Assembly (NCBI GenBank): GCA_038087875.1
Contig: JAXLNO010002167.1
Coordinates: forward strand, 1-64,000
From: Malacoraja senta
Taxonomy: Eukaryota
Direction: 5' to 3'
DNA: 64,000 nt
The notes below the pieces were generated by a model. It did not search any database, was not told the origin of the DNA, and was given only the letters and a program-made list of their open reading frames with translations. This document shows positions 2,243-26,200 of this stretch, piece after piece. Within the stretch, counting starts at the first letter, position 1. Each line of letters opens with the position of its first letter. The translations under genes and the position numbers were made by a program.

Positions 2243-5200
2243 CTATAAAACATAAAAGATGTCACAGTCGGTTATAACGCATACTGTTGCTCTATGACTG
2301 TATCAGGTTCAACTTGTTATTTTTCATTTTCAGGATACAGATGTCACCAGCAATACTGGCATTTATTGTCAATCCCCAATTTCCCCATATTGACGAGACA
2401 AAGGCAAAACTTTCCATGACCAACAAGAGACATAACTGACATACCATCTTTAAATTTCCATGACTGTGGTATGAAGAATTCTCCTGTTCTTGTACAGATT
2501 GTACAATGGAAACCAATGCCACTACTGGACAGCTGCAGCCTGAGCTAAACAGCTCTGCTTAGATATATCTTACATCCTTAACTGGAAGTAGCATTGTAGC
2601 TGCGAGAGTGGATGGAGGGTGTGCTATGAGTCAAGCTGGCCTGAGAAATTATAGACTAGTTTCACTGCTTTAATGGTATAGTCCTCTTCAGTAATGCAAA
2701 ACCCTATATCCCATAAATCGTTACAGGTGTTGTCGATTCTGTATTGCAGAAAAACATTTTACAATAAACAATTGCATTAATGCTGTACACTCAGAATAAA
2801 ACTGACTGGCTCAGATTTCTTACAGGATGCCGAATGGTGAAGGATGACTGGAATGTGGCTGAGAGCACGATAGGGAAATCAAAATAAATCTGAAGTGGGG
2901 AACAATTAAGGTGAGTTAAGAGAGTTAAAGGTTCTTCATTGTGAAAAGGGATCAAAGGAGAATATTAGAGTGTTTGAGTAGATCGGTGGATGTAGAATTG
3001 CATCTGGGACAGAGAAAGAGGGAAGGAGGATGGGAGAGTGTATGGACGGCAGCAGAGGATTAGAATTTGGAAGAAACAATGAGAAGTAGCATGGCCACAT
3101 GAAGAGGCAGGGATAATGGAGAGAATATGGGCTGGACAGTTTGTACAGAGGGGGGAAAGATGATGGATTGAAATATCTGTGGAATTCTCACTGAAACAGA
3201 ATAAAATTCCAAATGCCCTCTCAATTAATGACAGTTTCCTTGCACAAGGCTGTCATATTTACTGTAAATAGTTGTTGTGGATGCTGTACTTGGAGTTGGT
3301 GTTGGCAGAGGCTCACAGCAAAACCGAATTTTATAGTCAAGACATATCTTGACTTCCTCCAAAGGCTCTTTGGTGACTCTGCAGACCAGTCCTACGTCTG
3401 GGTCACAGGTCACATTGTCTGGTGATTCACTTAATGACCACTGAGAGAAATCGGCAAATTTGCACTCGATTTTATTAATTGTATAGGAAACGGAAGGACA
3501 CAAATCTTGTCGTATGGACTCCAGTAATTCAATATCGCCTGGACTGTCTGGAGATGGTCTATGGCCATTAAACCATGCAGACCAGCCACCAATGCAAGTC
3601 CCCTCTGGAAAAGGAGAAGCCAAGGTTCAGTTTATCTTCCAAATGTTAATTAATCAAAAGTACAGAATAAAATAGCAAAATAACTTTTCCCCATTTGATG
3701 GTATTCCTCAGTACTGGCAAGCTTTATAGCTGACAAGACTGCAGCACCTCTTCCCAGACATTGAAAATAGAACAGTACAGCACGGATATTGGCCCTTTGG
3801 CCCACAATGTTTGTGCTGAACATGATGCCTGATAATCTGATCTAATCTGCATGATCCAAATCCCTTTATTCTCTGCACTTCCACGTGCTTATCCAAAAAC
3901 CTCTTAAAGTCAACTACTATATCTGCTTCCACCACCACCCCTGGCAGAGCATTCCAGGCCCCCACCACTTTCTGTGTAAAAGAATTGCCTCAAACATTTA
4001 CATTAAACTTGTCCCATCTCACCTTATAACTATACCATCTAATGTTAGACATTTCCACCCTGGGAAATAGGTTTTGACTCCCTGCCATATCTGTGCCTCT
4101 CATAATTTTATATACTTCTATCAAGTCTCCTCTCAACCTCCGATGTTCCAGAGAAAACAATGCAAGTTTATCCAAACTCTTCCTCTAGCTGAAACCTTCT
4201 AATCTAGGTGACATTCTGGTAAACCTCCTCTGCACCCTTTCCAAAGCCTCCTCATAATTCCTGTAAAGGGGCGACCAGAATTGCATGCAATATTTCACAT
4301 GTGACCTTACCAAAGTCCTATAGAGCTGCACAATGACTTCTATGTCTCCAACAATGAAGGCTGTTGTTGTGGCTCATGTTGCAGCCCCTGGCCGGCAGCA
4401 CTTTCTTCAGGCCACTGCCAGTAACAAGATGTGCTCAATCACAGAGGGGCTCCCTCTCTTCTCACCAGCTCCACCACAGCCGGCTACTCCTTCTCCCGCG
4501 GCTTTGCCCACTCCGCCGCTCCATTGCTGCCTCCTCCTCCTTCACCCTGCAGTCCCCGACATCTTCCAAGGTGGAGTATGTCGGCGACTCCAGGGGAGAT
4601 GGATGTGGAGGGGGCAGGGAAGAGACCAAGTGCACAGAGCGATGGGGGAAAGAGGAGGAGGCAGCAGTTGAGCAGACAAAGTGAGGGTCGGCATTTAGAA
4701 GTAGCAGCTGGCGAGAGTGGAGGGAGCGCCACAATGACCAAGCACATCCTGTCATTGGCAACGGCCCTAAGAAAGCGCTGTCCCCATGGGGCTACAACAT
4801 GAGCCGCAACTGCAGCCACCTCAACCAGACTGTGCAGTAGATAAAGAAGGGCACGATGATGCACGTTGAAAGCCGGGGGTGGGGTGAGAAGCTGGGGCCG
4901 GAAGCAGAGGGGAGATGGTGTGTGCCAGGAGTTGCATTGGCTGTCGGTCAGCTAAAACCAAAACTTGTTATAAAGTGCTCTGTTAAAATGAGGGTTTACA
5001 GTACTGTGATCTTCCATATTGTAAAACCCTAATTCCCTAAGAATCTCCACCACTTCCCTCCCTGTCATTAGCCCACGGCATGTAATTTCACCTCATCCTA
5101 ATCCTGTACAAGGTGTTTCCTTTAGTTTCTCTTCAGTCCTCTTTCGTGACGTCTAAACTTTAGAAGTCACGAAAGCTTTAGACTAAAGCTCATCCTGTCT

Positions 5201-8200
5201 CCCTCCCCTCCACCTTTCTTTGCGCTACTCTTCCCAAACTGGCTGCCACACAACATCCCTTCATAGTCTTCCAATTTAACAGCAACAAGGTCCATCAGAA
5301 TTTATTTTGAAGGACAATGAAAAAGCAATAAGGAAATTAACATAAATCTGTTCCGGGCACTGACAAGGTGTGAAAGAGAGGTAGAGTTTCCTCATTGGAA
5401 AAAGAGATCGAAGAGGAATATTTGCTGCTTTCTCAATAGCCCACTCAGAGTCCTTGTGCGGAAAAATTTGGTACAAGGAGAAACAGCTGTCAATCTCTTA
5501 CCAGTTGTGTAGGTGCTGGTTGATGTAGTTGTAGGCGGTACCTTTATTGTTGTTGTTGTTGTTGTTTCTATAAAATACAAAAGATGTCACAACAAGTTAT
5601 AATACACACTGTGGCTCGATGACTTGGTATCAGGTCAAAATTTTCACTTTTCAATTTCAGGATGTAGGTGCCACCAGCAATGCTGCCATTTATTGTCAAT
5701 CGCCAATTTATTCCATATTAAGGAGACAAAGGCTAAACTTTTCACACCTAACAATAAACATTGAACATAATTTTGCAAAATATATCCCTTTAAGTTGCAA
5801 CATTATTCCAATGATGACAATATCCAAATGACTCAATTCGAGTCATCTGAGACAGAATCAGGGTGTTATTTTCTTCCAAGTAATAAATCAGGCTCCTTTG
5901 GAGACCCACTGTTACCTACCTGGTTTGTAGCTGGGAGTGGTTGTGGTCTGCATCGCTGTTGGTAAGGTTGTTTCTAGAGAGCAGACAAAAACATTTAAAT
6001 TGCACACTGAGATTCTATGCATGTGCTTCGTTCAAATGCTTGCTTCCTGCTGCATGATTCCAAGTATTAGAAAAAAACTTTGGCTAATGTTTCTACACCA
6101 CATGGAAAATAAGAGGGAGCATTGACCATTTAGCACTTTAAACCAACATGATTATGGTTGGTCATCTATCTCTCCCCATCCCCCTTGAGGACTTTTTTTG
6201 AACTTCTACAGATGAAAAAATAGAGATCATATTGACTGGTTGCATCACGGACTGGTTCGGCAACTTGAATGCCCAGGAGCGAAGAAGACTGCACAAAGTG
6301 GTGTGCATGGCCCAGTCCATGACGGGTTCCGATCTCCCCACCAACGAAGGAATTTACAGGAGTCACTGGCTCAAAAAGGCATCCAGCATAATCAGAGAAC
6401 CACACCACCTAGGCCACACATTCATTTCACCCTTGCTATCGGAAAGAAGGCACAGGAGCCTGAAAACTATAGCATCCAGGTTCACGAATAGCTTCTTCCA
6501 TGCAGCCATCAGGCTATTAATTACTACAACCTCCAAATAAGCTCTGAACTAAGACTTGGGGGTACTGGTTTTGTCTTTTTGCACTATTTTTGTTTGTTTG
6601 TGGAAAATAAGAGGGGAAATTTAAACCAAAATGGTGATGGTCATCTATCTCTCCTCATCCCCCTTGAGACCTTTTGAGCCTGGAAGTTGTTCCACCTCCA
6701 TAAATATATTCAGTGACTTGGATTCTTAAGCCTTCTTAAGTGGCAAACTCCATACGGGTCATCACCCTTTGAGTGCAAATATTATTGCTCCTCAGTCCAT
6801 AATCTCTTGCTCAATAATGGGAGACGGTGACCCTCTTAGTCTAGTCTCCACAGCGTGGGAACCCTGTCCTGTTCTGCCAGGATGTTTAAAGTTTCTATGA
6901 GCTTTGTTGTTCATTTGCTAGGTGCTAATCCACCTCCCGCTCTATTCGAAATGATCTCCCAGGCAAATCTTGCCTTATCAAGTGTTGTTTCTGTCAGTAC
7001 ATCATCCAGCGCTTCCTAGATTTACTCCCATCACTCCAGAATATTCGATCATTTGTGGGAATGGTCACTTTTATCGATTGGTTCAAGATAGGTAATTGCA
7101 TTAATGCTGTATCCTTTATGTAAACTAGACTGACCCAGATTTCTTAACTGATGAATGCTGAGTGGTATAGAACACAATCAGCAGAACTTTTTATAATCTG
7201 AAGACTGAAGAGTGAAGGCTAGAGGGTTAGAATTGTGCGATACCACAGAGATAGAAATCTCAGTAATCCATCCTCAGTAATGGAATAGATAAATGGGCCA
7301 AAGCCTGTGATTCAAGATTGTGCTTTGCCAGTTACTGGACAGGAGATGGAAGCTATGACGACAAATCAAATTTTTAAATGTGGTCTGAGGCTAAAGGCTT
7401 TGTTCTTTCTTGCATTTATTTGGAGGAAAAGTTCTGGTCATTGAGTACCGGATGTTGGGTAATCAACCTGAAAATGTAGTGGAAAAATATAGAGGAGAAA
7501 TTGGAGTGGGACATTAGAGAATCAGCACCATTACTCTTCCCGTTAATCACTGAAAGGGACATATTTCACCTCAACATAATCCTGAACATGGGACTTCCTT
7601 CAGATTTTCTCCCGTCTTCTATTGTGACTCCGAGAGCTTATCCTGTCCACCTCCCCTTGCTCTCCTTTTGCGCTACGCCTTCCAAACTGTCTACTACACC
7701 ACATACATTCAAGGCCTCTCAGTTTTAATGACAACAAGGTCCATGTGAATTTTATGGAGGTGAATGAAAAAGCGATAAGATAATCAAGATGAATCTGTAG
7801 CAGAGAGCAGATAAGGTGTGAGAGAGGGTTAAAGGAGGGAAGAGTAAGGGTTCCTCATTGGGAAAAGGAACAAAGATGGATGATAGGCCATGTTTGAGTA
7901 GATTGGTGAATGTAGAATTGCAGCTGAAAACAGATGTTGTACTTGGAATTGTTGTTGCTATATTCTCACAGCAAAATCGAATTTGATAGTCAAGACAGAC
8001 CTTGACTTCCTCCAAGGATTCTATGGAGACACTGCAGACCAGTCCTACGTCTGGGTCACAGGTCACATTGTCTGGCGATTCATTTATTGGCCATTCAGGG
8101 AAATCGGCAAATTGGCACTCGACTTTTTTAATTGTATGGTAAATGGAAGGGCACAGATCTTGCCGTATGGATTCAAGTAATTCAGTATTGCCTGGACTGT

Positions 8201-11200
8201 ATTCAGATGGTGTGTGATCATTATACCATGCAGACCAGACACCATTACATTTCCAGTCTGGAAAAGGAGAAGCTTCCTTCAAGTGTTCATTAACCAAAAG
8301 TACAAAATAAAATAGCAAGATACATATTTCCTCATTTGATGGTATTTCTCAGCACTGGCCCGGTTTATAGTTGTGAAGATGTGCAGCACCTACTCCCAAA
8401 TCTCTGAAACATTTTGCCTTCTTTTGAATCACAATATTTTTGGATGACAAGATATATTAAATCAAAATAATCTGTGGAATACTCATTTGCATTTCACATA
8501 TTGGAGGCACATAATCATGAGCCTATTTCTGCCAATTATGCACATCACTAAATATTGTATCAACTGGTGTTGAATTCTTGATCAGCACAGTCTAATGGGA
8601 ATATTCACTGAAACACAGTCCTCTGAAGATTATCCATAATTTACAACACAAAGTCCACAGCTACAATTAATTCAAAAGCAAATGTTTAGAAAATGCATTA
8701 TCTGAGAAAGCTCAGTGAAAGTTGTACGTTGCTGCTTTCTCAATGGCTCACCCAGAGACCTGTGCCGACAAACTTGGTGCAAGGATAAACAACCGTCAAT
8801 CACTTACCAGCTGTGTAGCTGCGGGCCGATGTAGTTGTGGGTGGTACCTTTGTTGTTGTTGTTTCTGTAAAACATAAAAGATGTCACGGCAAGTTATAAT
8901 GCACACTGTTCCTCGATGACTTGGTATCAGGTCCATCTTTTCATTTTTTATTTCAAGGTGTAGGTACCACCAGCAATGCAGGCATCTATTGTCAATTCAC
9001 CATTGCCCCATGTTAAGGAGGCAAGTGCTCAACCTTCCATCAGCATCCTTTTGTGTTTCCATTCATCACATTCAGTTAGATTGTCATGTTCACAATAGAT
9101 TTTCTTCTTCATGTTGCCCTTTAAATTGCAACATAAATCCAATTATGCCATCCAATCAAAGCAATCAATTAGGAAGAATAATGTGAGATAGAATCAGTGA
9201 TATTTTGTTCAAAGACGGAAGAATAAACCAGGTTCCTTTGAAGAGCAACTGTGGGCAAGAAGTACAGTAATCCCACTGTTACCCGTCTAGTTTGTAGCTG
9301 GTAGTAGATGATGTTGTTGTTTGAAACTCTTTTGGTGAAGTTGTTTCTCAATGGTGTTAAGGAGTGATAGAGAGTTAAAGAAGGGCAGAGTAAGAGTTCC
9401 TCATAGGGAAAGGTATCCAAGTTGAAGGATACTCTGTAGCTTAGATCGGTGGCTTGAGAATTACTGCTGGAAATAGACAGAGGGAAGGAGGATGAGAGAG
9501 TGTATGGACCGCAGCAGAAGGAAGTCGTCGGTGAGGGATAGAATTTTAAGAAAATGAGAAGTAGCATGGCCACATGAAGAGTGGGGATTAATGGAGAGAA
9601 TATGGGCTGGCTAGTTTGTACAGAGCTCATTAGAGGGGAAACGTGATGGATGGAAATGCATCAGGAACTCTCACTGAAACAGATAAAATTCCAAATGCCC
9701 CATCAATAAAAGACAGTATCCTTGCACATGACTGGCATATTTACCTGAAATTGTTGTTGTTGATGTTGTACTTGGAGTTGTTGTTGCTACATGCTCATAG
9801 CAAAATCGAATTTGATAGTCAAAACAGATGTTGACTTCCTCCAAAGGCTCATTGGAGACTATGCAGACCAGTCCTAAGTCTGGGTCACAGGTCACATTGT
9901 CTGGTGAATCATTTAGTGGCCAATAAGGGAAATCGACAAATTGGCACTCAACCTTTTTAATTGTACAGTAACTGGAAGGACACAGATCTTGCCGTATGGA
10001 TTCCAGTAATTCAGTATCGCCTGGACTGTATTCAGTTGGTATGTGGTCATTATACCATGCAGACCAGACACCATTACATTTCCAGTCTGGAAAAGGAGAA
10101 GCAAAGGTTCAGTTCATCTTCCTTCAAGTGTTCATTAACCAAAAGTACAAAATAAAATAGCAAGATACATATTTCCTCATTTGATGGTATTTCTCAGCAC
10201 TGGCCGGGTTTATAGTTGTGAAGATGTGCAGCACCTACTCCCAAATTCCTGAAACATTTTGCCTTCTTTTGAATCACAATATTTTTGGATGACAAGATAT
10301 ATTAAATCAAAATAATCTGTGGAATACTCATTTGCATTTCACATATTGGAGGCACATAATCATGAGCCTATTTCTGCCAATTATGCACATCACTGAATAT
10401 TATATCAACTGGTGTTGAATTCTTGATCAGCACAGTCTAATGGGAATATTCACTGAAACACAGTCCTCTGAAGATTATCCATAATTTACAACACAAAGTC
10501 CACAGCTACAATTAATTCACAAGCAAATGTTTAGAAAATGCATTATCTGAGAAAGCTGTGAAAGTTGTACGTTGCTGCTTTCTCAATGGCTCACCCAGAG
10601 ACCTGTGCCGACAAACTTGGTGCAAGGATAAACAACCGTCAATCACTTACCAGCTGTGTAGCTGCGGGTCGATGTAGTTGTGGGTGGTACCTTTGTTGTT
10701 GTTGTTTCTGTAAAACATAAAAGATGTCACGGCAAGTTATAATGCACACTGTTCCTCGATGACTTGGTATCAGGTCCATCTTTTCATTTTTTATTTCAAG
10801 GTGTAGGTACCACCAGCAATGCAGGCATCTATTGTCAATTCACCATTGCCCCATGTTAAGGAGGCAAGTGCTCAACCTTCCATCAGCATCCTTTTGTGTT
10901 TCCATTCATCACATTCAGTTAGATTGTCATGTTCACAATAGATTTTCTTCTTCATGTTGCCCTTTAAATTGCAACATAAATCCAATTATGCCATCCAATC
11001 AAAGCAATCAATTAGGAAGAATAATGTGAGATAGAATCAGTGATATTTTGTTCAAAGACGGAAGAATAAACCAGGTTCCTTTGAAGAGCAACTGTGGGCA
11101 AGAAGTACAGTAATCCCACTGTTACCCGTCTAGTTTGTAGCTGGTAGTAGATGATGTTGTTGTTTGAAACTCTTTTGGTGAAGTTGTTTCTCAATGGTGT

Positions 11201-14200
11201 TAAGGAGTGATAGAGAGTTAAAGAAGGGCAGAGTAAGAGTTCCTCATAGGGAAAGGTATCCAAGGTGAAGGATACTCTGTAGTTTAGATCGGTGGCTTGA
11301 GAATTACTGCTGGAAATAGACAGAGGGAAGGAGGATGAGAGAGTGTATGGACCGCAGCAGAAGGAAGTCGTCGGTGAGGGATAGAATTTTAAGAAAATGA
11401 GAAGTAGCATGGCCACATGAAGAGTGGGGATTAATGGAGAGAATATGGGCTGGCTAGTTTGTACAGAGCTCATTAGAGGGGAAACGTGATGGATGGAAAT
11501 GCATCAGGAACTCTCACTGAAACAGATAAAATTCCAAATGCCCCTTCAATAAAAGACAGTATCCTTGCACATGACTGGCATATTTACCTGAAATTGTTGT
11601 TGTTGATGTTGTACTTGGAGTTGTTGTTGCTACATGCTCATAGCAAAATCGAATTTGATAGTCAAAACAGATGTTGACTTCCTCCAAAGGCTCATTGGAG
11701 ACTATGCAGACCAGTCCTAAGTCTGGGTCACAGGTCACATTGTCTGGTGAATCATTTAGTGGCCAATAAGGGAAATCGACAAATTGGCACTCAACCTTTT
11801 TAATTGTACAGTAACTGGAAGGACACAGATCTTGCCGTATGGATTCCAGTAATTCAGTATCGCCTGGACTGTATTCAGTTGGTATGTGGTCATTATACCA
11901 TGCAGACCAGACACCATTACATTTCCAGTCTGGAAAAGGAGAAGCAAAGGTTCAGTTCATCTTCCTTCAAGTGTTCATTAACCAAAAGTACAAAATAAAA
12001 TAGCAAGATACATATTTCCTCATTTGATGGTATTTCTCAGCACTGGCCGGGTTTATAGTTGTGAAGATGTGCAGCACCTACTCCCAAATTCCTGAAACAT
12101 TTTGCCTTCTTTTGAATCACAATATTTTTGGATGACAAGATATATTAAATCAAAATAATCTGTGGAATACTCATTTGTATTTCACATATTGGAGGCACAT
12201 AATCATGAGCCTATTTCTGCCAATTATGCACATCACTGAATATTATATCAACTGGTGTTGAATTCTTGATCAGCACAGTCTAATGGGAATATTCACTGAA
12301 ACACAGTCCTCTGAAGATTATCCATAATTTACAACACAAAGTCCACAGCTACAATTAATTCACAAGCAAATGTTTAGAAAATGCATTATCTGAGAAAGCT
12401 GTGAAAGTTGTACGTTGCTGCTTTCTCAATGGCTCACCCAGAGACCTGTGCCGACAAACTTGGTGCAAGGATAAACAACCGTCAATCACTTACCAGCTGT
12501 GTAGCTGTGGGTCGATGTAGTTGTGGGTGGTACCTTTGTTGTTGTTGTTTCTGTAAAACATAAAAGATGTCACAGCAAGTTATAATGCACACTGTTGCTC
12601 GATGACTTGGTATCAGGTCCATCTTTTCATTTTTTATTTCAGGGTGTAGGTACCACCAGCAATGCAGGCATTTATTGCTGGTCAATTCACAATTGCCCCA
12701 TGTTAAGGAGGCAAGTGCTCAACCTTCCATCAGCATCCTTTTGTGTTACCATTCATCACATTCAGTTAGATTGTCATGTTAACAATACATTTTCTTCTTC
12801 ATGTTGCCCTTTAAATTGCAACATCAATCCAATTATGCCATCCTATCAAAGCAATCAATTAGGAAGAATAATGTGAGATAGAATCAGAGTGATATTTTGT
12901 TCAAAGACGGAAGAATAAACGAGATTCCTTTGAAGAGCAACTGTGGGCAAGAAGTACAGTAATCCCACTGTTACCTGTCTAGTTTGTAGCTGGTAGTAGA
13001 TGATGTTGTTGTCTGAAACTCTTTTGGTGAAGTTGTTTCTCAATGGTGTTAAGGAGTGATAGAGAGTTAAAGAAGGGCAGAGTAAGAGTTCCTCATAGGG
13101 AAAGGTATCAAAGTTGAAGGATACTCTGTACTTTAGATCGGTGGCTTGAGAATTACTGCTGGAAATAGACAGAGGGAAGGAGGAAGGGAGAGTGGATGGA
13201 CCGCAGCAGAAGGAAGTCGTCGGTGAGGGATAGAATTTTAAGAAAATGAGAAGTAGCATGGCCACATGAAGAGTGGGGATTAATGGAGAGAATATGGGCT
13301 GGCTAGTTTGTACAGAGCTCATTAGAGGGGAAACGTGATAGATGGAAATGCATCTGGAACTCTCACTGAAACAGAATAAAATTCCAAATGCCCCTTCAAT
13401 AAAAGACAGTATCCTTGCACATGACTGGCATATTTACCTGAAATTGTTGTTGTTGATGTTGTACTTGGAGTTATTGTTGCTACATGCTCATAGCAAAATC
13501 GAATTTGATAGTCAAGACAGATGTTGACTTCCTCCAAAGACTCATTGGAGACTGTGCAGACCAGTCCTACGTCTGGGTCACAGGTCACATTGTCTGATGT
13601 TTCATTTAGTGGCCAATAAGGGAAATCGACAAATTGACACTCAACTTCTTTAATTGTACAGTAACTGGAAGGACACAGATCTTGCCGTATGGATTCCAGT
13701 AATTCAGTATCGCCTGGACTGTATTCAGATGGTTTGTGGTTATTATACCATGCAGACCAGACACCATTACATTTCCAGTCTGGAAAAGGAGAAGCAAAGG
13801 TTCAGTTCATCTTCCTTCAAGTGTTCATTAACCAAAAGTACAAAATAAAATAGCAAGATACATATTTCCTCATTTGATGGTATTTCTCAGCACTGGCCCG
13901 GTTTATAGTTGTGAAGATGTGCAGCACCTACTCCCAAATCCCTGAAACATTTTGCCTTCTTTTGAATCACAATATTTTTGGATGACAAGATATATCAAAT
14001 CAAAATAATCTGTGGAATACTCATTTACATTTCACATATTGGAGGCACATAATCATGAGCCTATTTCTGCCAATTATGCACATCACTAAATATTATATCA
14101 ACTGGTGTTGAATTCTTGATCAGCACAGTCTAATGGGAAAATTCACCGAAACACAGTCCTCTGAAGATTATCCATAATTTACAACACAAAGTCCACAGCT

Positions 14201-17200
14201 ACAATTAATTCAAAAGCAAATGTTTAGAAAATGCATTATCTGAGAAAGCTGTGAAAGTTGTACGTTGCTGCTTTCTCAATGGCTCACCCAGAGACCTGTG
14301 CCGACAAACTTGGTGCAAGGATAAACAACTGTCAATCACTTACCAGCTGTGTAGCTGCGGGTCGATGTAGTTGTGGGTGGTACCTTTGATGTTGTTGTTT
14401 CTGTAAAACATAAAAGATGTCACAGCAAGTTATAATGCACACTGTTGCTCGATGACTTTGTATAAGGTCCATCATTTCATTTTTTATTTCAGGGTGTAGG
14501 TACCACCAGCAATGCAGGCATTTATTGCTGGTCAATTCACAATTGCCCCATGTTAAGGAGGCAAGTGCTCAACCTTCCATCAGCATCCTTTTGTGTTTCC
14601 ATTCAATACATTCAGTTAGATTGTCATGTTAACAATAGATTTTCTTCTTCATGTTGCCCTTTAAATTGCAACATCAATCCAATGATGCCATCCTATCAAA
14701 GCAATCAATTAGGAAGAATAATGTGAGATACAATCAGTGATATTTTGTTCAAAGACGGAAGAATAAACCAGGTTCCTTTCGAGAACAATTGTGGGCAAGA
14801 AGTACTGTAATCCCACTGTTACCTGTTTAGTTTGTAGCTGGTAGTAGATGATGTTGTGGTCTGAAACTCTTTTGGTGAAGTTGTTTCTCAATGGTGTTAA
14901 GGAGTGATAGAGAGTTAAAGAAGGGCAGAGTAAGAGTTCCTCATAGGGAAAGGTATCAAAGTTGAAGGATACTCTGTACTTTAGATCGGTGGCTTGAGAA
15001 TTACTGCTGGAAATAGACAGAGGGAAGGAGGAAGGGAGAGTGGATGGACCGCAGCAGAAGGAAGTCGTCGGTGAGGGATAGAATTTTAAGAAAATGAGAA
15101 GTAGCATGGCCACATGAAGAGTGGGGATTAATGGAGAGAATATGGGCTGGCTAGTTTGTACAGAGCTCATTAGAGGGGAAACGTGATAGATGGAAATGCA
15201 TCTGGAACTCTCACTGAAACAGAATAAAATTCCAAATGCCCCTTCAATAAAAGACAGTATCCTTGCACATGACTGGCATATTTACCTGAAATTGTTGTTG
15301 TTGATGTTGTACTTGGAGTTATTGTTGCTACATGCTCATAGCAAAATCGAATTTGATAGTCAAGACAGATGTTGACTTCCTCCAAAGACTCATTGGAGAC
15401 TGTGCAGACCAGTCCTACGTCTGGGTCACAGGTCACATTGTCTGGTGTTTCATTTAGTGGCCAATAAGGGAAATCGACAAATTGACACTCAACTTCTTTA
15501 ATTGTACAGTAACTGGAAGGACACAGATCTTGCCGTATGGATTCCAGTAATTCAGTATCGCCTGGACTGTATTCAGATGGTTTGTGGTTATTATACCATG
15601 CAGACCAGACACCATTACATTTCCAGTCTGGAAAAGGAGAAGCAAAGGTTCAGTTCATCTTCCTTCAAGTGTTCATTAACCAAAAGTACAAAATAAAATA
15701 GCAAGATACATATTTCCTCATTTGATGGTATTTCTCAGCACTGGCCCGGTTTATAGTTGTGAAGATGTGCAGCACCTACTCCCAAATCCCTGAAACATTT
15801 TGCCTTCTTTTGAATCACAATATTTTTGGATGACAAGATATATCAAATCAAAGTAATCTGTGGAATACTCATTTACATTTCACATATTGGAGGCACATAA
15901 TCATGAGCCTATTTCTGCCAATTATGCACATCACTAAATATTGTATCAACTGGTGTTGAATTCTTGATCAGCACAGTCTAATGGGAAAATTCACTGAAAC
16001 ACAGTCCTCTGAAGATTATCCATAATTTACAACACAAAGTCCACAGCTACAATTAATTCAAAAGCAAATGTTTAGAAAATGCATTATCTGAGAAAGCTGT
16101 GAAAGTTGTACGTTGCTGCTTTCTCAATGGCTCACCCAGAGACCTGTGCCGACAAACTTGGTGCAAGGATAAACAGCCGTCAATCACTTACCAGCTGTGT
16201 AGCTGCGGGTCGATGTAGTTGTGGGTGGTAACTTTGTTGTTGTTGTTTCTGTAAAACATAAAAGATATCACAGCAAGTTATAATGCACACTGTTGCTCGA
16301 TGACTTGGCATCAGGTCCATCTTTTCATTTTTTATTTCAGGGTGTAGGTACCACCAGCAATGCAGGCATTTATTGCTGGTCAATTCACAATTGCCCCATG
16401 TTAAGGAGGCAAGTGCTCAACCTTCCATCAGCATCTTTTGTGTTTCCATTCATCACATTCAGTTAGATTGTCATGTTAACAATAGATTTTCTTCTTCATG
16501 TTGCCCTTTAAATTGCAACATCAATCCAATGATGCCATCCTATCAAAGCAATCAATTAGGAAGAATAATGTGAGATACAATCAGTGATATTTTGTTCAAA
16601 GACGGAAGAATAAACCAGGTTCCTTTCGAGAACAATTGTGGGCAAGAAGTACTGTAATCCCACTGTTACCTGTTTAGTTTGTAGCTGGTAGTAGATGATG
16701 TTGTGGTCTGAAACTCTTTTGGTGAAGTTGTTTCTCAATGGTGTTAAGGAGTGATAGAGAGTTAAAGAAGGGCAGAGTAAGAGTTCCTCATAGGGAAAGG
16801 TATCAAAGTTGAAGGATACTCTGTACTTTAGATCGGTGGCTTGAGAATTACTGCTGGAAATAGACAGAGGGAAGGAGGAAGGGAGAGTGGATGGACCGCA
16901 GCAGAAGGAAGTCGTCGGTGAGGGATAGAATTTTAAGAAAATGAGAAGTAGCATGGCCACATGAAGAGTGGGGATTAATGGAGAGAATATGGGCTGGCTA
17001 GTTTGTACAGAGCTCATTAGAGGGGAAACGTGATAGATGGAAATGCATCTGGAACTCTCACTGAAACAGAATAAAATTCCAAATGCCCCTTCAATAAAAG
17101 ACAGTATCCTTGCACATGACTGGCATATTTACCTGAAATTGTTGTTGTTGATGTTGTACTTGGAGTTATTGTTGCTACATGCTCATAGCAAAATCGAATT

Positions 17201-20200
17201 TGATAGTCAAGACAGATGTTGACTTCCTCCAAAGACTCATTGGAGACTGTGCAGACCAGTCCTACGTCTGGGTCACAGGTCACATTGTCTGATGTTTCAT
17301 TTAGTGGCCAATAAGGGAAATCGACAAATTGACACTCAACTTCTTTAATTGTACAGTAACTGGAAGGACACAGATCTTGCCGTATGGATTCCAGTAATTC
17401 AGTATCGCCTGGACTGTATTCAGATGGTTTGTGGTTATTATACCATGCAGACCAGACACCATTACATTTCCAGTCTGGAAAAGGAGAAGCAAAGGTTCAG
17501 TTCATCTTCCTTCAAGTGTTCATTAACCAAAAGTACAAAATAAAATAGCAAGATACATATTTCCTCATTTGATGGTATTTCTCAGCACTGGCCCGGTTTA
17601 TAGTTGTGAAGATGTGCAGCACCTACTCCCAAATCCCTGAAACATTTTGCCTTCTTTTGAATCACAATATTTTTGGATGACAAGATATATCAAATCAAAG
17701 TAATCTGTGGAATACTCATTTACATTTCACATATTGGAGGCACATAATCATGAGCCTATTTCTGCCAATTATGCACATCACTAAATATTGTATCAACTGG
17801 TGTTGAATTCTTGATCAGCACAGTCTAATGGGAAAATTCACTGAAACACAGTCCTCTGAAGATTATCCATAATTTACAACACAAAGTCCACAGCTACAAT
17901 TAATTCAAAAGCAAATGTTTAGAAAATGCATTATCTGAGAAAGCTGTGAAAGTTGTACGTTGCTGCTTTCTCAATGGCTCACCCAGAGACCTGTGCCGAC
18001 AAACTTGGTGCAAGGATAAACAGCCGTCAATCACTTACCAGCTGTGTAGCTGCGGGTCGATGTAGTTGTGGGTGGTAACTTTGTTGTTGTTGTTTCTGTA
18101 AAACATAAAAGATATCACAGCAAGTTATAATGCACACTGTTGCTCGATGACTTGGCATCAGGTCCATCTTTTCATTTTTTATTTCAGGGTGTAGGTACCA
18201 CCAGCAATGCAGGCATTTATTGCTGGTCAATTCACAATTGCCCCATGTTAAGGAGGCAAGTGCTCAACCTTCCATCAGCATCTTTTGTGTTTCCATTCAT
18301 CACATTCAGTTAGATTGTCATGTTAACAATAGATTTTCTTCTTCATGTTGCCCTTTAAATTGCAACATCAATCCAATGATGCCATCCTATCAAAGCAATC
18401 AATTAGGAAGAATAATGTGAGATACAATCAGTGATATTTTGTTCAAAGACGGAAGAATAAACCAGGTTCCTTTCGAGAACAATTGTGGGCAAGAAGTACT
18501 GTAATCCCACTGTTACCTGTTTAGTTTGTAGCTGGTAGTAGATGATGTTGTGGTCTGAAACTCTTTTGGTGAAGTTGTTTCTCAATGGTGTTAAGGAGTG
18601 ATAGAGAGTTAAAGAAGGGCAGAGTAAGAGTTCCTCATAGGGAAAGGTATCAAAGTTGAAGGATACTCTGTACTTTAGATCGGTGGCTTGAGAATTACTG
18701 CTGGAAATAGACAGAGGGAAGGAGGAAGGGAGAGTGGATGGACCGCAGCAGAAGGAAGTCGTCGGTGAGGGATAGAATTTTAAGAAAATGAGAAGTAGCA
18801 TGGCCACATGAAGAGTGGGGATTAATGGAGAGAATATGGGCTGGCTAGTTTGTACAGAGCTCATTAGAGGGGAAACGTGATAGATGGAAATGCATCTGGA
18901 ACTCTCACTGAAACAGAATAAAATTCCAAATGCCCCTTCAATAAAAGACAGTATCCTTGCACATGACTGGCATATTTACCTGAAATTGTTGTTGTTGATG
19001 TTGTACTTGGAGTTATTGTTGCTACATGCTCATAGCAAAATCGAATTTGATAGTCAAGACAGATGTTGACTTCCTCCAAAGACTCATTGGAGACTGTGCA
19101 GACCAGTCCTACGTCTGGGTCACAGGTCACATTGTCTGGTGTTTCATTTAGTGGCCAATAAGGGAAATCGACAAATTGACACTCAACTTCTTTAATTGTA
19201 CAGTAACTGGAAGGACACAGATCTTGCCGTATGGATTCCAGTAATTCAGTATCGCCTGGACTATATTCAGTTGGTTTGTGGTTATTATACCATGCAGACC
19301 AGACACCATTACATTTCCAGTCTGGAAAAGGAGAAGCAAAGGTTCAGTTCATCTTCCTTCAAGTGTTCATTAACCAAAAGTACAAAATAAAATAGCAAGA
19401 TACATATTTCCTCATTTGATGGTATTTCTCAGCACTGGCCCGGTTTATAGTTGTGAAGATGTGCAGCACCTACTCCCAAATTCCTGAAACATTTTGCCTT
19501 CTTTTGAATCACAATATTTTTGGATGACAAGATATATTAAATCAAAGTAATCTGTGGAATACTCATTTGCATTTCACATATTGGAGGCACATAATCATGA
19601 GCCTATTTCTGCCAATTATGCACATCACTGAATATTGTATCAACTGGTGTTGATTTCTTGATCAGCACAGTCTAATGGGAAAATTCACCGAAACACAGTC
19701 CTCTGAAGATTATCCATAATTTACAACACAAAGTCCACAGCTACAATTAATTCAAAAGCAAATGTTTAGAAAATGCATTATCTGAGAAAGCTGTGAAAGT
19801 TGTACGTTGCTGCTTTCTCAATGGCTCACCCAGAGACCTGTGCCGACAAACTTGGTGCAAGGATAAACAACCGTCAATCACTTACCAGCTGTGTAGCTGC
19901 GGGTCGATGTAGTTGTGGGTGGTACCTTTGTTGTTGTTGTTTCTGTAAAACATAAAAGATATCACAGCAAGTTATAATGCACACTGTTGCTCGATGACTT
20001 GGCATCAGGTCCATCTTTTCATTTTTTATTTCAGGGTGTAGGTACCACCAGCAATGCAGGCATTTATTGCTGGTCAATTCACAATTGCCCCATGTTAAGG
20101 AGGCAAGTGCACAACCTTCCATCAGCATCTTTTGTGTTTCCATTCATCACATTCAGTTAGATTGTCATGTTAACAATAGATTTTCTTCTTCATGTTGCCC

Positions 20201-23200
20201 TTTAAATTGCAACATCAATCCAATGATGCCATCCTATCAAAGCAATCAATTAGGAAGAATAATGTGAGATACAATCAGTGATATTTTGTTCAAAGACGGA
20301 AGAATAAACCAGGTTCCTTTCAAGAACAATTGTGGGCAAGAAGTACTGTAATCCCACTGTTACCTGTTTAGTTTGTAGCTGGTAGTAGATGATGTTGTGG
20401 TCTGAAACTCTTTTGGTGAAGTGGCCTGTCCCACTTGCGTGTCCTTGGCATGCAAATTAAGTGACCTCGTCATCGCGTTGAGGCGCACGGGCATCGTGTG
20501 GCCGCGCGGGGCCGCTTCCACTGAGAAGCGCGGAGGGGTATGGAGTTGTGCGCGGTATCGCGCGGCGTTCCGGAATTTTGTACCAAACGGAATCTTCGCG
20601 AGCAACCGACCCGTTGCGTAACTGACGGCCAAAGTGGGACAGGCCCAAGACCCTGGCGTGACGCAACCTCTCACCTCCAACAGCAGTAGAAGCAGGCAAA
20701 CGATCGTCGAACTCGGCCTGGGGCTCACGGCCATTGCGGATCCGATCCGTCCCCTCTTCTGCTCCCAGAGCGGGGCCAAGAAAATTGAGATAGACTCCTA
20801 CAAAATGTAGGAGTGACTCAGCGGGACCGGCAGCATATCTGGAGAGAAGGAATGGGTGACGTTTCAGGTCAAGACCCTTCTTTCAGACTGAAGAAGGGTC
20901 TCGACCCGAAACATCATCCATTCCTTCTCTCCAGAGATGCTGCCGGTCCCGCTGAGTTACTCCAGCATGTTGTAGCAATGTTACAATACTTACCTTCAGC
21001 TGCGCTGCAGTTCTGCCACTGGCCATGTGCGTGACTTTGGCGCCTTTGAGGGGGGTGGCGGGATAAAAATCCAGTTTTCTACCGCCTGTCCGAGACCGAT
21101 TTCCTCTGGTGATTCATTTATTGGCCAATAAGGGAAATGGACAATTGGCACTCAACTATTTTAATTGTATAGTAAATGGAAGGACAAGCTCTGCCATTCA
21201 ATATGATTATGGCTGATGATCGCTTTCTATCCAACCCCCTTGAGGCTTTTGATATTTTATATTTCTCTACCTCCTAAAATATATTCAGTGATGTTGGCTC
21301 TCAAGTGTTTTGATTAGCAAACTCCACAGGGCCTCACTCTCTCCTCATGTTCTCCTCATTTCAGTCCATAATTTCGTGCCAATATCTTGAGACTGTGACC
21401 CAATAGTCTAAGTCTCCACAGCAAGGGGAATCCTTATCAGACCTCTCTGGATTTTTGAAGTTGCAGTGAGGCTTTCTTCCATTCTACTAACTACAGGTGG
21501 TTAAACGGACTTGACCTAATCTCTCCAGATATGACAATTCTGCTGGAGCGGAAGTCAATCCGGTCAACTTTCACTGCACGATCTCTCAGGAAGCATATAT
21601 TTTCTCAGATGAGGAGGTCAAAATTTAATCAGTCTTCCAAGCATGTTATCATAAGAGACTTGTATTGCTGTATGAATGAATGAATGATACTTTATTATCA
21701 CGTGACATGTCACCGTGAGATTCTTTGTTTTGCATACACAAGGTATGCAAAGAGTCGCCACATACAGGGCACCGACGGATACCAATGCCTCAGCCGGACT
21801 GATAATCTCAGGACCCTGCCATCATGATGCACCAAGATCTAATAAGAACTTAGTCATCAACCCTGCCCCACTCCCAGTCTCCTTATTTCTATTCTTGATT
21901 ATGCTTACAAACCTGGTCTACTCACAACAACACGCATCCCGACCACCCAGACCAGCCTCTGTGTCAGCACCTGCTCCTGTGAAAATTATCACCACCTGCT
22001 CTGGAACTCCAGGCAACTTTGGCCTCGTCCTTGGCTGAAGATCTCAGCAGTGAGTCCACCACTGACCAGATGCACCATGCACCACTGACCAGAACTACTA
22101 GATGCACCATTGAGCAGAACTTCTAGCTGACTAATTGGGGCACACTGCTGTCTCAATGCATTCAATGTACAGTACTTTTGAAACTGAGCAGATGATGTTT
22201 AGTCAAAATATACAATCTAGGGATAAGTAATGAATCTCCACAGCAACTCATGTACATCAATTGGTCACAACTCTTTGAGAAGTTGGTTATGGGGCATATC
22301 AACCCCTACCTCAACAAGAACCTCGACCCATTACAGTTTGCCTACCATCACAATAGGTCCACGGAGGATGCAATCTCACTGGCTCTCCACTCCACACTGG
22401 ACCACTTGGACAATATAACACTTACGTCAGGCTGTTGTTTATAGACTACAGCTTGGCGTTCAATACCATCATCCCCTGCAAGCTGGTTACCAAGCTCACG
22501 GAATTGGGTCTCTGTGCATCCCTCTGCAATTGGATCCTCAACTTCCTCATTCACAGACCATAATCTGCTTGAATTGACTGAAATACTTAATCCTCAGTAA
22601 CAATCAGAACGAGAGCACCTCAAGGTTGCGTGCTCAGCCCCCTGCTCTACTCACTCTATACTCATGACTGTGTAGTTGGACACAGTGCGAACTCCATCTT
22701 CAAGTTCGTCAATGACACCACTATTGTGAGATGAATTACAGATGGTGATGAATCAGAGTATGGAAGTGAGATTGACCGATTAACCAAATAGTGCCAGCAC
22801 AACAACCTGGCTCACAATATCGGTAAAACCAAAGAACTGATTGTGGACTTTAGAAGAGGAAGGATTAGGACCCACAATCCTGTTTATATCAATGGGACGA
22901 TGGTGGAGAGAGTCAAAAACTTCAAATTCCTGGGCGTGCATATTTCCGAAGATCTTTCCTGGACCCAGCACACTGATGCAATAATAAAGAAAGCACATCA
23001 GAGCCTCTACTTCTTGAGAAGGTTACGGAGATTCAGTATGTCAAAGAGGATTCTCTTCAACTTCTACAGGTGCACAGTAGAGAGCATATTGACTGGCTGC
23101 ATCATGGCCTGGTTGGGCAACTTGATCATCCAGGAGTGGAAAAGACTGCAAAAAGTTGTAAACACTGCCCAGTCCATTACTGGCTCTGATCTCCCCACCA

Positions 23201-26200
23201 TTGAAGGGATTTATCAAATTTGTTGCCTCAAAAATGGAGCCAGCATCAACAGAGACCTCACCATTCTGGCCACACACTCATTTCACCACTGCCGTCGGGA
23301 AGAAGGTACAGGAGCCTGAAAACTGTAACGTCCAGATTCAGGAACAGCTTCTTCCCTACAGCCATCAGGCTATTAAACACTACATCCTCATATAAGCTCT
23401 AAACTACAATAGACTATTATTATTATTAATATTGCACTATTATTGTTTGCTTTTTGAGTATGTGTGTATATACACACACTGAACTTTTTTTTCTCTCTCT
23501 CGTTTATCATATTATTTACAGTGTACTATGTTTACATATTCTGTTGTGCTGCAGCAAGTAAGAATTTCATTGTTCTATCTGGGACATATGACAATAAAAC
23601 ATTCTTGACTCTCTCTCTTGAATCAATATTAGGAACAATTCTCTAAAGGTTGTTCAGCATTTACAACCGAAAACCCAGTTCAATATCAGTTCTAAAGCAT
23701 TTAATTAGACAAGAATGTATGACAGGTCAGTGAAAGTTGTAGCCTGTTGCTCTCTGAATGACTCACTCAATAATTTAGAAATTATAGAATAATTTAATGC
23801 TTGTCTAAACAGGCATGATGTAAAGTATAACTGCGCTCACTTCCCAGTTATGTGAGTACTGGGTGAAATAGTTGTCATCAGTATCTGCTTTGTTGTGGTT
23901 GTTTCTATAAATCAAGGAAGGAATTGCAGTCAGTTACTACACTGCACACCCGTTTAGTTTAGAGATACAGCGCGGAAACAGGCCCTTTGGCTCATTGTTT
24001 CCGCGCCGGCCAACAGTTCCCGCACACTAACACTATCCTACACACATTATGGACAATTTACAATTTTTACTGAAGCTAATTAAGCTACAAACCTGTACGT
24101 CTTTGGAGTGTGGGAGGAAACCGGAGAAAAATCACGCAGGTCACGAGGAGAATGTACAAATTTCATAAATACAGCCCCCGTAGTCGGGATCCAACCTGGG
24201 GCTCTGGTGCTGTACGGCAGCAACTCTACCACCATGCTGCCATCCCAACCCGTGTTGGGTTTAAAGACCTTGAGGCTAAAACTGATACCCCTCCCTCCAC
24301 CACCAAAAGGTACAGGGAGAGGGCCACACAGTCAATCAGTCCAGGTCCATTATAACTGCGGGTAGCAGACCAGGTTTGTGCTGGTTGCTAGTTTTTCTCA
24401 GTTTTACTTTAATTCTGTGTAAACTGCATGGAGTAATGGCTCCTGGATCAGTCAAGATCCAATGCTGAGTGAAGCTCATTTCATTTAAAGAAAAATTGCA
24501 CTGATTCAAGTGCATAAACTCTGGGATTCTGCAGGTGAAGGCTTTCCTGGAAATCAGTGGGGATGAATGGTCTCCAGGATGTTGTGCTGGGCCTTGATGC
24601 ATCAGCGTTCATTGAGAAGAGATATTTTGTTGCACTGGAAATTGTAGATGCTGGATACAAGTCCAGATGCAGCATTGATGAGGATATTAGCAGAGCTAGA
24701 GGGTTGAAATTGTATGATAATACAGAGATGGAGATTAGTATTGGAATAGATAAATGGGCCAAAGATTATCTTGCGATTCAACATGTTCTCAGGATTATAA
24801 TAGTCGTTCTTCACAACTTCCCATTCTGACACTGGCCCAATGGGACAAACTTCATCTCAACTCAATCCTGAGCATGGGTCTTCCTTTAGTTCCACTCTCA
24901 TTGTCTGGTTATTCACATTGGCCACTCAGGGAAATGGGCAAATTGGCATCAAATGTTCAATAACCAAAATTACAGAATAAAATTGCAAAACAATTGTTTT
25001 CGCAATTGATGATATTCCTCAGTACTGGCATGGTTTATAGTTGTGAAGGTGTGCATCACCTACTCCTAAAGCCCTAAGACTTCTCGCCTTCTCTTGAATG
25101 ACAGCAAGAATACTCATTCCAAATTTCACTTTATAGGAGCACATAATCATGAGCCTATTTTGACCAATCATGTACATCACCAAATAATATTTAAACTGGG
25201 GTTCAATTCATAATTTGCACTGTCTTATCTCAAAATTCACAGAAATACAATCCTCTGTAAGTTGTACATAATTTACAACAGAAAGTCCACAGAGACAATT
25301 AATTCTATAGCAAATCAATAGAAAATGGCAAATAAGAGAAAGATCAGTGGAAGTTGTACTTTCAGTTGTGCAATCAAACCTGGTGCAAGAAGATACAGCA
25401 GTCAATGACTTACCAGATGTGGAGTTGCGGGTTGATGAAGTTGTAGGCGGTACTTTTGTTGTTGTAGTTGTTGTTGTTGTTGTTGTTGTTGTTTCTATAA
25501 AACACAAAATATATCACTGCTGGTATGCTGGGTATCATTTCCATCAGAAAAGCATTTGCTAGTATTGTCTGGTGGAAATGCGTGTGCTGTTCACAAAAAT
25601 ATTTGCAAGGCTTCCAACGGAAAGATCCCTTTGACAGATAAACAAACCATGCCATTTGAAAAATTTCAGGTCCATTGAAAAAGGAACCTGGTAGCATTCC
25701 TGACGTACTATACAAGTGTCATTTTTCTCAGCCTTCGAGGGCTGAACTGCAATGAAGTATCGAGGGTTGATGAGAGATTCTGTCAGTTAAATATTTACTG
25801 CAGGTATTTTAATACCCTATCTTGTTAGGGTTTCCAAACACAGAATTCACTTCGACACATTGGTTGCAATGGGCGGTAGTAGGACAAAAGGGAAAACAGG
25901 TTTTAAACTTTTTGTTTAACCTGAATACTTTTAATTAATTGTATCTGTTTTTATGAGGTTTAGATAATTTTACTTTCTTTACTTTGGGGGGGGGGGGGGG
26001 GTTATAGTCTGTAAGGATGTTTGTCAAAAACAGCTGGGGTGCAGTAAAATGGGCAGGAGGTTTTGGGGCAGGACATCCTTATTGACTAATAGATACAAAG
26101 AATTGCTGATGTTGGTCCTGCAGGGGGACCAGAAGACCCTCAAACAGCTCATCAATTGGGCAATGGGAACAGATTTCTGTGGATGTCACTGCCAGGATTC

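What the first reader, a model, noticed from the sequence alone, without database searches (positions are those of the whole stretch)
9745..19321. Cysteine swap fixed in all six young CysD copies
Seen: older copies (3263-3604, 7935-8257) end in the canonical IRFCC and have LCPSVSYT or LCPSIYHT. All six array copies end in IRFCY (TGT to TAT) and carry a new Cys in LCPSSYCT, so the count stays at 8. Inference: the N-terminal Cys (WKC) has probably lost its usual C-terminal partner. Either it re-pairs with the new Cys (a rewired fold) or each module exposes two free thiols, giving covalent lateral cross-link sites where CysD interactions are normally non-covalent. The variant arose before the expansion and was amplified.
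Basis: partly seen in the sequence, partly recalled or inferred. Interest (0 to 1): 0.8.

Follow-up and report, generated by a model that had tools for sequence, protein, structure and literature searches.

The report
Relocated cysteine in skate mucin CysD
Six tandem exons of a skate mucus-protein gene encode a known small domain (CysD) in which a cysteine and a tyrosine have traded places; a second skate species has the same change, so it most likely moves one internal disulfide bond rather than breaking the domain.

Summary
On the minus strand, six intact 342-nt phase 1-1 CysD exons (19321-18980 to 10086-9745) all read LCPSSYCT and IRFCY. The two older exons read LCPS(V/I)(S/Y)(Y/H)T and IRFCC. 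All eight have 8 Cys.

- **Reciprocal swap.** Codon 40 went TAT to TGT and codon 96 went TGT to TAT.
- **Not private to this genome.** The Amblyraja radiata orthologue (RefSeq mucin-2-like XP_032895182/3) has six identical swap-type exons in a 1.85-kb array, and its gene models include 3 or 4 of them.
- **Rare.** Among 877 distinct CysD sequences from 312 proteins, only that orthologue shares the pattern.
- **The fold is kept.** AlphaFold2 gives the same fold for old and new copies (pLDDT 89.6 and 89.5). Substitutions among swap-type copies avoid family-conserved columns (P about 0.005-0.009).

Best reading (0.55): the N-terminal Cys now bonds the new Cys40, keeping four internal disulfides. 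Free thiols that cross-link are not excluded (about 0.22). Cys-Cys distances could not be measured because no model coordinates were available. This is a new variant of a known domain, of moderate interest. An earlier scan note (s1-175087) describes the same stretch.

The parts
18980..19321 (-). Swap-type CysD exon 1 of the array ([13 protein letters not shown]; codon 40 at 19202-19200, codon 96 at 19034-19032)
   Evidence: Pfam PF13330
17133..17474 (-). Swap-type CysD exon 2
15286..15627 (-). Swap-type CysD exon 3
13438..13779 (-). Swap-type CysD exon 4 (modelled with AlphaFold2, pLDDT 89.5)
11588..11929 (-). Swap-type CysD exon 5 (sub-family A; 12 nonsynonymous and 2 synonymous differences from exons 1-4)
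9745..10086 (-). Swap-type CysD exon 6 (identical in the exon to exon 5)
7943..8257 (-). Canonical CysD exon at the 3' edge of the array ([13 protein letters not shown]). The 3' boundary is uncertain because there is no gtaaat donor; the candidate is CAA|gtacaa.
   Evidence: AlphaFold2 model with pLDDT 89.6
3263..3604 (-). Canonical CysD exon ([13 protein letters not shown]). It keeps the ancestral TAT at codon 40 and resembles the main CysD type of Rhinoraja.
8273..20576 (-). Tandem array with a period of about 1847 bp. Each unit holds one 57-nt PTS mini-exon, one CysD exon and introns.
8808..19942 (-). Seven 57-nt phase 1-1 PTS mini-exons (19942-19886, 18095-18039, 16248-16192, 14400-14344, 12550-12494, 10707-10651, 8864-8808) encoding xTTT(T/S)K(V/L)PPTTTS(T/A)(R/H)SYTA
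25414..25494 (-). First PTS exon after D3, orthologous to the A. radiata exon L001:52758-52835, which the RefSeq model joins to the array
21080..21186 (-). Broken CysD pseudo-exon remnant ([17 protein letters not shown]...[10 protein letters not shown]). It shares its 5' breakpoint with the A. radiata pseudo-exon L001:56619-56912 but keeps Tyr (TAT) at codon 40.
24916..25053 (-). Second degraded CysD pseudo-exon remnant with stop codons, comparable to L001:53343-53637
32470..63056 (-). Exons of the N-terminal D1-D2-D'-D3 region of the same gel-forming mucin gene
   Evidence: tblastn with elasmobranch mucins, 87-100% identity to A. radiata XP_032895183

Best explanation
The stretch is the start of the central region of a skate gel-forming mucin gene on the minus strand. 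The orthologue is annotated as mucin-2-like in Amblyraja radiata.

After D3 and a short PTS exon, the protein is built from repeated units: a 19-residue O-glycosylated linker exon followed by a CysD exon. In the six array units a tyrosine and a cysteine have exchanged places. Residue 40, at the start of the long beta-strand C, changed Tyr to Cys. Residue 96, the second Cys of the C-terminal CC in strand F, changed Cys to Tyr.

Residue 96 normally bonds the N-terminal Cys (WKC, residue 3). The most likely consequence is that Cys3 now bonds Cys40. The other three bonds (35-95, 47-66, 74-87) and the beta-sandwich fold stay as they were, and Tyr96 fills the space that Tyr40 left.

The domain would then act like other CysDs: a compact, calcium-binding, non-covalently interacting knot between glycosylated linkers.

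Shown: the sequence change, its presence in two species, the intact exons and the fold prediction.
Inferred: the canonical bond map (from natural co-loss of cysteines) and the new 3-40 bond.
For: 1. All six exons carry TGT at codon 40 and TAT at codon 96. The ancestral state at codon 40 is TAT: the 3604 exon, the pseudo-exon remnant at 21186 and the Rhinoraja CysDs all have Tyr there. The change is therefore a reciprocal Tyr/Cys exchange that keeps the Cys count even.
2. Canonical pairing inferred from natural co-loss. Lamprey CysDs lack only the pre-WxxW Cys and the second C of the CC. Carp CysDs lack only the mid Cys and the first C of the CC. The 10-Cys class differs from the 8-Cys class by one extra N-terminal and one extra C-terminal Cys. 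The C5-C6 bond matches the C1365-C1379 loop described in PMC11912381.
3. The C1-C8 bond is the most plastic bond in the family. It is CxC instead of CC in 64 distinct domains, it is lost in lamprey, and the N-terminal Cys sits anywhere from -2 to -8.
4. The same swap occurs in six intact 339-nt exons of the A. radiata orthologous locus, and RefSeq isoforms include 3 or 4 of them.
5. The 20 columns that vary among swap-type copies avoid all 19-21 family-conserved columns (P = 0.005-0.009). All splice sites and frames are intact.
6. AlphaFold2 gives the same secondary structure and confidence for new and old copies (pLDDT 89.5 against 89.6). The new model matches solved CysD structures (TM 0.58-0.72).
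Against: - No coordinates were available, so the distances between residue 40 and residues 3 and 96 are unknown.
- The bond map rests on two co-loss events and on class co-occurrence, not on a structure that I could read.
- AlphaFold2 confidence around residues 31-40 drops from 92 to 84 in the new copy.
- Nonsynonymous change among swap-type copies runs at about the intron rate (dN 0.06-0.07 against about 0.06 intron divergence; dN/dS 1.7-2.5 on 2 synonymous changes). Overall constraint is therefore weak.
- Retention of two codons over about 6% divergence is not in itself significant.
- Transcription in this species was not shown.
Confidence: 0.55

Rival explanations
1. Free-thiol, cross-linking reading. 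Cys3 and Cys40 cannot reach each other, so each of the six modules exposes two unpaired cysteines. These form disulfides between domains or between molecules, or to partners such as TFF- or FCGBP-like proteins. That would turn the normally non-covalent CysD contacts into covalent lateral cross-links.
For: - The partner of the N-terminal Cys is indeed the one that was lost.
- AlphaFold2 confidence falls locally around the new Cys (84 against 92).
- CysD units with an odd Cys count exist in relatives, for example two Rhinoraja units with a ninth Cys in the linker and 11-Cys domains in several fish proteins. Unpaired cysteines are therefore tolerated in this family.
- The domain surface evolves fast, as might be expected for a changed interaction mode.
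Against: - One Cys was lost and one gained, by a reciprocal Tyr/Cys exchange. That is the signature of compensation rather than exposure.
- Twelve free thiols per chain would be expected to cause ER retention or disulfide scrambling (general knowledge of secretory quality control). Yet in A. radiata this is the only repeated CysD type of the gene.
- Solved and mapped CysDs have only internal disulfides (PMC3195396; PMC7599080).
Confidence: 0.22
2. Double rewiring. Cys35 and Cys40 close a small local C-x4-C loop (CPSSYC). Cys95, freed from Cys35, bonds the N-terminal Cys3. All eight cysteines stay paired but two bonds change.
For: - Cys35 and Cys40 are only five residues apart, in the loop between the helix and strand C.
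- The N-terminal Cys can evidently reach either face of the last strand, because CC and CxC variants both exist.
Against: - It needs two bonds to change instead of one.
- It removes the widely kept mid-Cys to first-C-of-CC bond.
- It does not explain why Tyr replaced Cys96.
Confidence: 0.1
3. The array exons are relaxed or unused sequence: duplicated exons that are skipped or on their way to decay. The Cys changes would then have no structural meaning.
For: - Exon divergence between species (about 5.5%) equals intron divergence (about 6%), and dN/dS is not below 1.
- Degraded CysD pseudo-exons lie just upstream in both species.
- No expression data exist for this genome.
Against: - All 12 exons in two species keep their frame, splice sites, all Cys, the WxxW motif and the Gly/Asp/Glu core.
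- Substitutions avoid conserved columns (P < 0.01).
- The true pseudo-exons show stops and truncation by contrast.
- The A. radiata RefSeq models use these exons as the main body of the central region.
Confidence: 0.08

Closest known systems
CysD domains of vertebrate gel-forming mucins (Pfam PF13330 Mucin2_WxxW; solved: MUC2 CysD1 6TM6, MUC2 CysD2 8S03, MUC5AC CysD7 8OV0, and the CysD chain of the MUC5B entry 8OER)
   Same: - Pfam hit well above the curated cut-off.
- WxxW motif, GDxE motif and the four invariant central cysteines.
- Predicted fold matches the solved structures (TM 0.58-0.72).
- Position between PTS linkers, downstream of D3.
   Different: The second Cys of the C-terminal CC is Tyr, and an extra Cys lies 7 residues before the xEC cysteine. 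None of 877 distinct CysD sequences surveyed has this pattern except the A. radiata orthologue. Like other elasmobranch CysDs, it belongs to the 8-Cys class, not the mammalian 10-Cys class.
Amblyraja radiata mucin-2-like (XP_032895182.1 / XP_032895183.1; locus CM021386.1:17.61-17.72 Mb)
   Same: - Orthologous gene: N-terminal exons are 87-100% identical.
- Same 1.85-kb array of six swap-type CysD exons, with the same codons at positions 40 and 96.
- Same mini PTS exon and the same upstream pseudo-exons.
   Different: - CysD exons are 94-95% identical in DNA and about 86% in protein, and are 339 instead of 342 nt.
- All six copies are nearly identical within A. radiata, whereas the window has two sub-families.
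- A. radiata lacks intact counterparts of the window's canonical exons at 8257 and 3604.
Lamprey (Lethenteron reissneri) mucin-5B/5AC-like 6-Cys CysDs, and 'CxC' CysD variants
   Same: These also alter the bond between the N-terminal Cys and the second C of the CC, which shows that this bond is the changeable one in the family.
   Different: Lamprey simply lost both partners, leaving 6 Cys. The CxC variants shift the C-terminal partner by one residue. The skate variant moves the partner to a different strand.

Membership tests
CysD domain (PF13330 Mucin2_WxxW) | Profile match above Pfam's gathering score | tested here: met
   51.9-64.1 bits against a cut-off of 22.4 for new and old copies
CysD domain (PF13330 Mucin2_WxxW) | WxxW (C-mannosylation-type) motif near the N-terminus | tested here: met
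   WSAW in all eight window copies and WSEW in A. radiata
CysD domain (PF13330 Mucin2_WxxW) | Four invariant central cysteines (C3-C6) and the G-L-x-C motif | tested here: met
   C47, C66, G71, C74 and C87 are invariant in a 150-sequence alignment and present in all copies
CysD domain (PF13330 Mucin2_WxxW) | C-terminal vicinal CC, each Cys bonded to an upstream Cys | tested here: not met
   The array copies read FCY. The second Cys is present in 91% of family members. The two older copies read FCC.
CysD domain (PF13330 Mucin2_WxxW) | Small beta-sandwich fold as in the solved CysD structures | tested here: met
   AlphaFold2 pLDDT 89.5. The Foldseek top hits are all CysD structures (8oer, 8ov0, 8s03, 6tm6), with TM 0.58-0.72 and probability 1.00. 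This is a prediction only.
CysD domain (PF13330 Mucin2_WxxW) | All cysteines in internal disulfides, with non-covalent self-association | not testable with these tools
   This needs coordinates or biochemistry. The literature basis for canonical domains is PMC3195396 and PMC7599080.
CysD domain (PF13330 Mucin2_WxxW) | Acidic calcium-binding motif (GDxE region) | tested here: inconclusive
   D23 and E25, conserved in 84% and 88% of the family, are present as PGDTE. Which residues bind calcium could not be read from a structure here.
Gel-forming mucin (MUC2/MUC5 type) | N-terminal D1-D2-D'-D3 (VWD-C8-TIL) assemblies upstream on the same strand | tested here: met
   Ordered tblastn hits from 63056 to 32470 to residues about 115-1180 of elasmobranch mucins
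Gel-forming mucin (MUC2/MUC5 type) | C-terminal D4, VWC and cystine-knot domains | not tested
   These lie outside the window. They are present in the A. radiata orthologue's protein.

The most novel reading that the evidence does not exclude
Each swap-type module exposes two reactive thiols (Cys3 and Cys40). This skate mucin would then carry a string of covalent lateral cross-linking sites. It would be a natural gel-forming mucin whose CysD contacts are disulfide bonds rather than weak non-covalent contacts, fixed in at least two skate genera.
Probability: 0.2. Interest if true: 0.75.

Novelty: new variant of a known kind. Interest (0 to 1): 0.42.

Why it matters
CysD domains set the cross-linking and pore size of mucus gels, and their five-disulfide scaffold is treated as fixed. 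This variant is a naturally fixed version, amplified six-fold and kept in two skate genera, in which one bond has lost a partner and gained another elsewhere.

If the bond has simply moved, the variant shows which CysD disulfide is evolutionarily movable. It also gives a ready-made pair of domains, old and new types in one gene, for testing how that bond affects stability and self-association.

If the thiols are free, it would be the first CysD built for covalent cross-linking.

Either outcome can be tested with one recombinant domain pair.

Tried and rejected
- **Measuring Cys-Cys distances.** Structure prediction returns no coordinates and none appear in /data.
- **Reading the solved disulfide map.** It is in Fig. 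S8A of PMC7599080, which is not held as text. The FEBS J 2023 and Cell Rep 2024 CysD papers are not in the library. The mass-spectrometry map in PMC3195396 is stated by PMC7599080 to differ from the crystal structure, so I did not use it.
- **Searching for short protein fragments like the exon.** Nothing was found.
- **Looking for this genome's own annotated protein.** None was flagged in the two long-query searches.
- **Idea rejected: the new Cys recreates the human-type mid Cys, which sits 8 residues before the xEC Cys.** Elasmobranch domains have a 4-residue longer segment after a conserved C-P, so the -12 Cys is the equivalent of the human -8 Cys and the -7 Cys is extra.
- **Idea rejected: dN/dS above 1 shows positive selection.** With only 2 synonymous changes it does not differ significantly from 1.
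- **Tandem Repeats Finder.** It found nothing because its maximum period is 500. The repeat finder did find the array.
Full report
**What is there**

The window is vertebrate DNA with elasmobranch-type repeats. Its minus strand carries the 5' two-thirds of a gel-forming mucin gene.
- tblastn with shark and ray mucins gives an ordered series of exons from 63056 down to 32470. These cover residues about 115-1180, the D1-D2-D'-D3 region.
- Downstream lie one PTS exon (25494-25414), two broken CysD pseudo-exon remnants (25053-24916 and 21186-21080), and then a tandem array with a period of about 1847 bp from 20576 to 8273.
- Each array unit holds a 57-nt PTS mini-exon and a 342-nt CysD exon. Both are phase 1-1 and have identical splice signals: ttttacag...gtaagtga for the mini-exon and ccttttccag...gtaaat for the CysD exon.
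- Two further CysD exons follow, starting at 8257 and at 3604-3263.
- All copies hit Pfam PF13330 Mucin2_WxxW and the solved CysD sequences of MUC5B, MUC2 and MUC5AC.

**The observation**

All six array exons read LCPSSYCT and IRFCY and have 8 Cys. The 3604 exon reads LCPSVSYT / IRFCC, and the 8257 exon reads LCPSIYHT / IRFCC.

| Copy | Codon 40 | Codon 96 |
|---|---|---|
| Six array exons | TGT | TAT |
| 3604 exon | TAT | TGT |
| 8257 exon | CAT | TGT |
| Pseudo-exon remnant at 21186 | TAT | deleted |

Tyr also occupies position 40 in both CysD types of the Rhinoraja longicauda orthologue. The ancestral state was therefore Tyr40/Cys96 and the array state is Cys40/Tyr96. That is a reciprocal exchange made by two transitions.

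The six copies inherited the change together, so it counts as one event. One small correction: the 8257 exon has no gtaaat donor, and CAA|gtacaa at 7943 is the only in-phase candidate I saw.

**Which bond is affected**

I could not read the solved disulfide map. It is in a figure of PMC7599080, and the later CysD papers are not held. I therefore inferred the map from natural variation.

An exhaustive HMMER search returned 150 CysD-containing proteins, and two further searches added elasmobranch mucins. In total, 312 proteins gave 1475 CysD hits, of which 1312 carried all anchor residues, and these made 877 distinct sequences.

Two main classes exist (counts of distinct sequences):
- **10-Cys class (616 sequences):** two Cys before WxxW, one mid Cys, C3-C6, CC, and one further Cys downstream.
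- **8-Cys class (167 sequences):** one Cys before WxxW, one mid Cys, C3-C6, and CC. The window's older copies and all shark and ray orthologues belong here.

The extra N-terminal and extra C-terminal Cys of the 10-Cys class therefore go together. Two natural co-losses fix the rest of the map:
- Lamprey CysDs lack exactly the pre-WxxW Cys and the second C of the CC.
- Two carp CysDs lack exactly the mid Cys and the first C of the CC.

The C5-C6 bond matches the C1365-C1379 loop named in PMC11912381. The inferred map for the window's domain is 3-96, 35-95, 47-66 and 74-87.

The same bond is the most variable one in the family. It reads CxC instead of CC in 64 distinct domains, it is lost in lamprey, and the N-terminal Cys lies anywhere from -2 to -8 before the WxxW.

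**Not confined to this genome**

Of the 877 distinct CysD sequences, only one has two mid Cys and a single Cys after C6. It is the repeated CysD of Amblyraja radiata 'mucin-2-like' XP_032895182/3. That protein is the orthologue, with N-terminal exons 87-100% identical to the window.

Its genomic locus (L001) contains:
- six intact 339-nt swap-type exons at a spacing of about 1.85 kb, with the same splice signals and the same TGT and TAT codons;
- the same type of mini-exon;
- two upstream pseudo-exons with stop codons.

One of these pseudo-exons (L001:56619-56912) shares its 5' breakpoint (…NGRACPS…) with the window's remnant at 21186. It reads SSYC/FCY, whereas the window's remnant reads SIYY. 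That difference suggests gene conversion in one lineage.

The two RefSeq isoforms contain three and four of the six units. These are followed by one canonical CysD, then D4, VWC and the cystine knot.

The Rhinoraja, Pristis and shark orthologues carry only canonical CC domains. The swap therefore arose within skates, before the split of A. radiata and this species.

**Age and selection**

| Comparison | CysD exon identity | Rest of the unit |
|---|---|---|
| Within the window | 95.9-100% | 97.2-100% |
| Between the two species | 94-95% | about 94% |

The copies group by species, so the arrays have been homogenised or re-expanded since the split. 'Young' describes the copies, not the swap.

Among swap-type copies, nonsynonymous change runs at about the neutral rate:
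- dN is 0.047-0.071.
- dN/dS is 1.7 between the window's two sub-families and 2.2-2.5 between species.
- These ratios rest on only 2 synonymous changes, so they show no overall purifying selection but do not differ significantly from 1.

The 20 variable columns nevertheless avoid all 19-21 columns that are conserved across the family (hypergeometric P = 0.005-0.009). All 12 exons keep their frame and splice sites, unlike the neighbouring pseudo-exons. This fits a folded domain with a fast-changing surface.

**Structure prediction**

Both models used the same 150-sequence alignment.

| Feature | New copy | Old copy |
|---|---|---|
| Mean pLDDT | 89.5 | 89.6 |
| pLDDT, residues 31-40 | 84 | 92 |

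The DSSP pattern is identical in the two models: strands 23-26, 40-49, 63-67, 71-75 and 90-98, and a helix at 27-34. The only difference is the lower confidence around the new Cys. The new Cys is the first residue of strand C, and residues 95 and 96 lie in strand F.

Foldseek places the new model with the solved CysD structures (TM 0.58-0.72). No coordinates are returned, so Cys-Cys distances could not be measured.

**Interpretation**

Four things point to compensation: the exchange is reciprocal, the Cys count stays even, two genera keep the change, and the fold core is conserved. The simplest form is that Cys3 now bonds Cys40 and Tyr96 takes the place of Tyr40 (confidence 0.55).

The rivals are:
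- two free thiols per module that form covalent cross-links (0.22);
- a double rewiring, 35-40 together with 3-95 (0.10);
- unused or decaying exons (0.08).

No paper in the library describes this variant.

**Verdict**

This is a new variant of a known domain that already sits, undescribed, in a public gene model of a related skate. Interest is moderate, and the deciding experiment is simple.

Noticed in passing
L001:56619-56912 (A. radiata) versus window 21186-21080: These are orthologous CysD pseudo-exons that share the same 5' breakpoint (…NGRACPS…). The A. radiata copy is swap-type (SSYC, FCY, with stops). The window copy keeps Tyr at codon 40 (SIYY) and has lost its 3' part. This suggests gene conversion between the array and the pseudo-exon in one lineage, or a fossil of the pre-swap state.
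   Followed up: partly
window 9745-19321 and L001:64748-74289: Among swap-type CysD exons nearly all substitutions are nonsynonymous (12-18 nonsynonymous against 2 synonymous). The two window sub-families differ more in the exon (about 4%) than in the rest of the unit (1.6-2.8%). This could be diversifying selection on the domain surface, but the counts are too small to tell.
   Followed up: partly
window 14870-14833 and the same place in every unit: Each unit contains a short PTS-like stretch ([12 protein letters not shown]) flanked by tttcag and gtaaca. It looks like a relic micro-exon, but it is 38 nt long and out of phase with the 1-1 exons, and it is not part of the A. radiata protein model.
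   Followed up: partly
P0157 (Rhinoraja longicauda mucin-5AC-like), residues about 2078-2338: Two CysD units carry a ninth cysteine in the linker just after the domain (…EPLPTPTSCTTS). The odd count could leave an unpaired thiol.
   Followed up: no
P0051/P0154 (Lethenteron reissneri mucin-5B/5AC-like): Lamprey CysDs have only 6 Cys. They lack both the N-terminal Cys and the second Cys of the CC, so one whole disulfide has been deleted naturally.
   Followed up: partly
window 7943-8257: The canonical CysD exon at the 3' edge of the array has lost the gtaaat donor shared by all the other copies. The intron upstream of it is still 98% identical to the array introns, so the duplication boundary lies at the exon's 5' edge.
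   Followed up: partly
window 3990-4175 (-) and 3708-3968 (-): ORF fragments such as [19 protein letters not shown] look, from my memory of such sequences, like a retrotransposon fragment of a kind common in elasmobranch genomes. They lie in the intron between the two older CysD exons.
   Followed up: no
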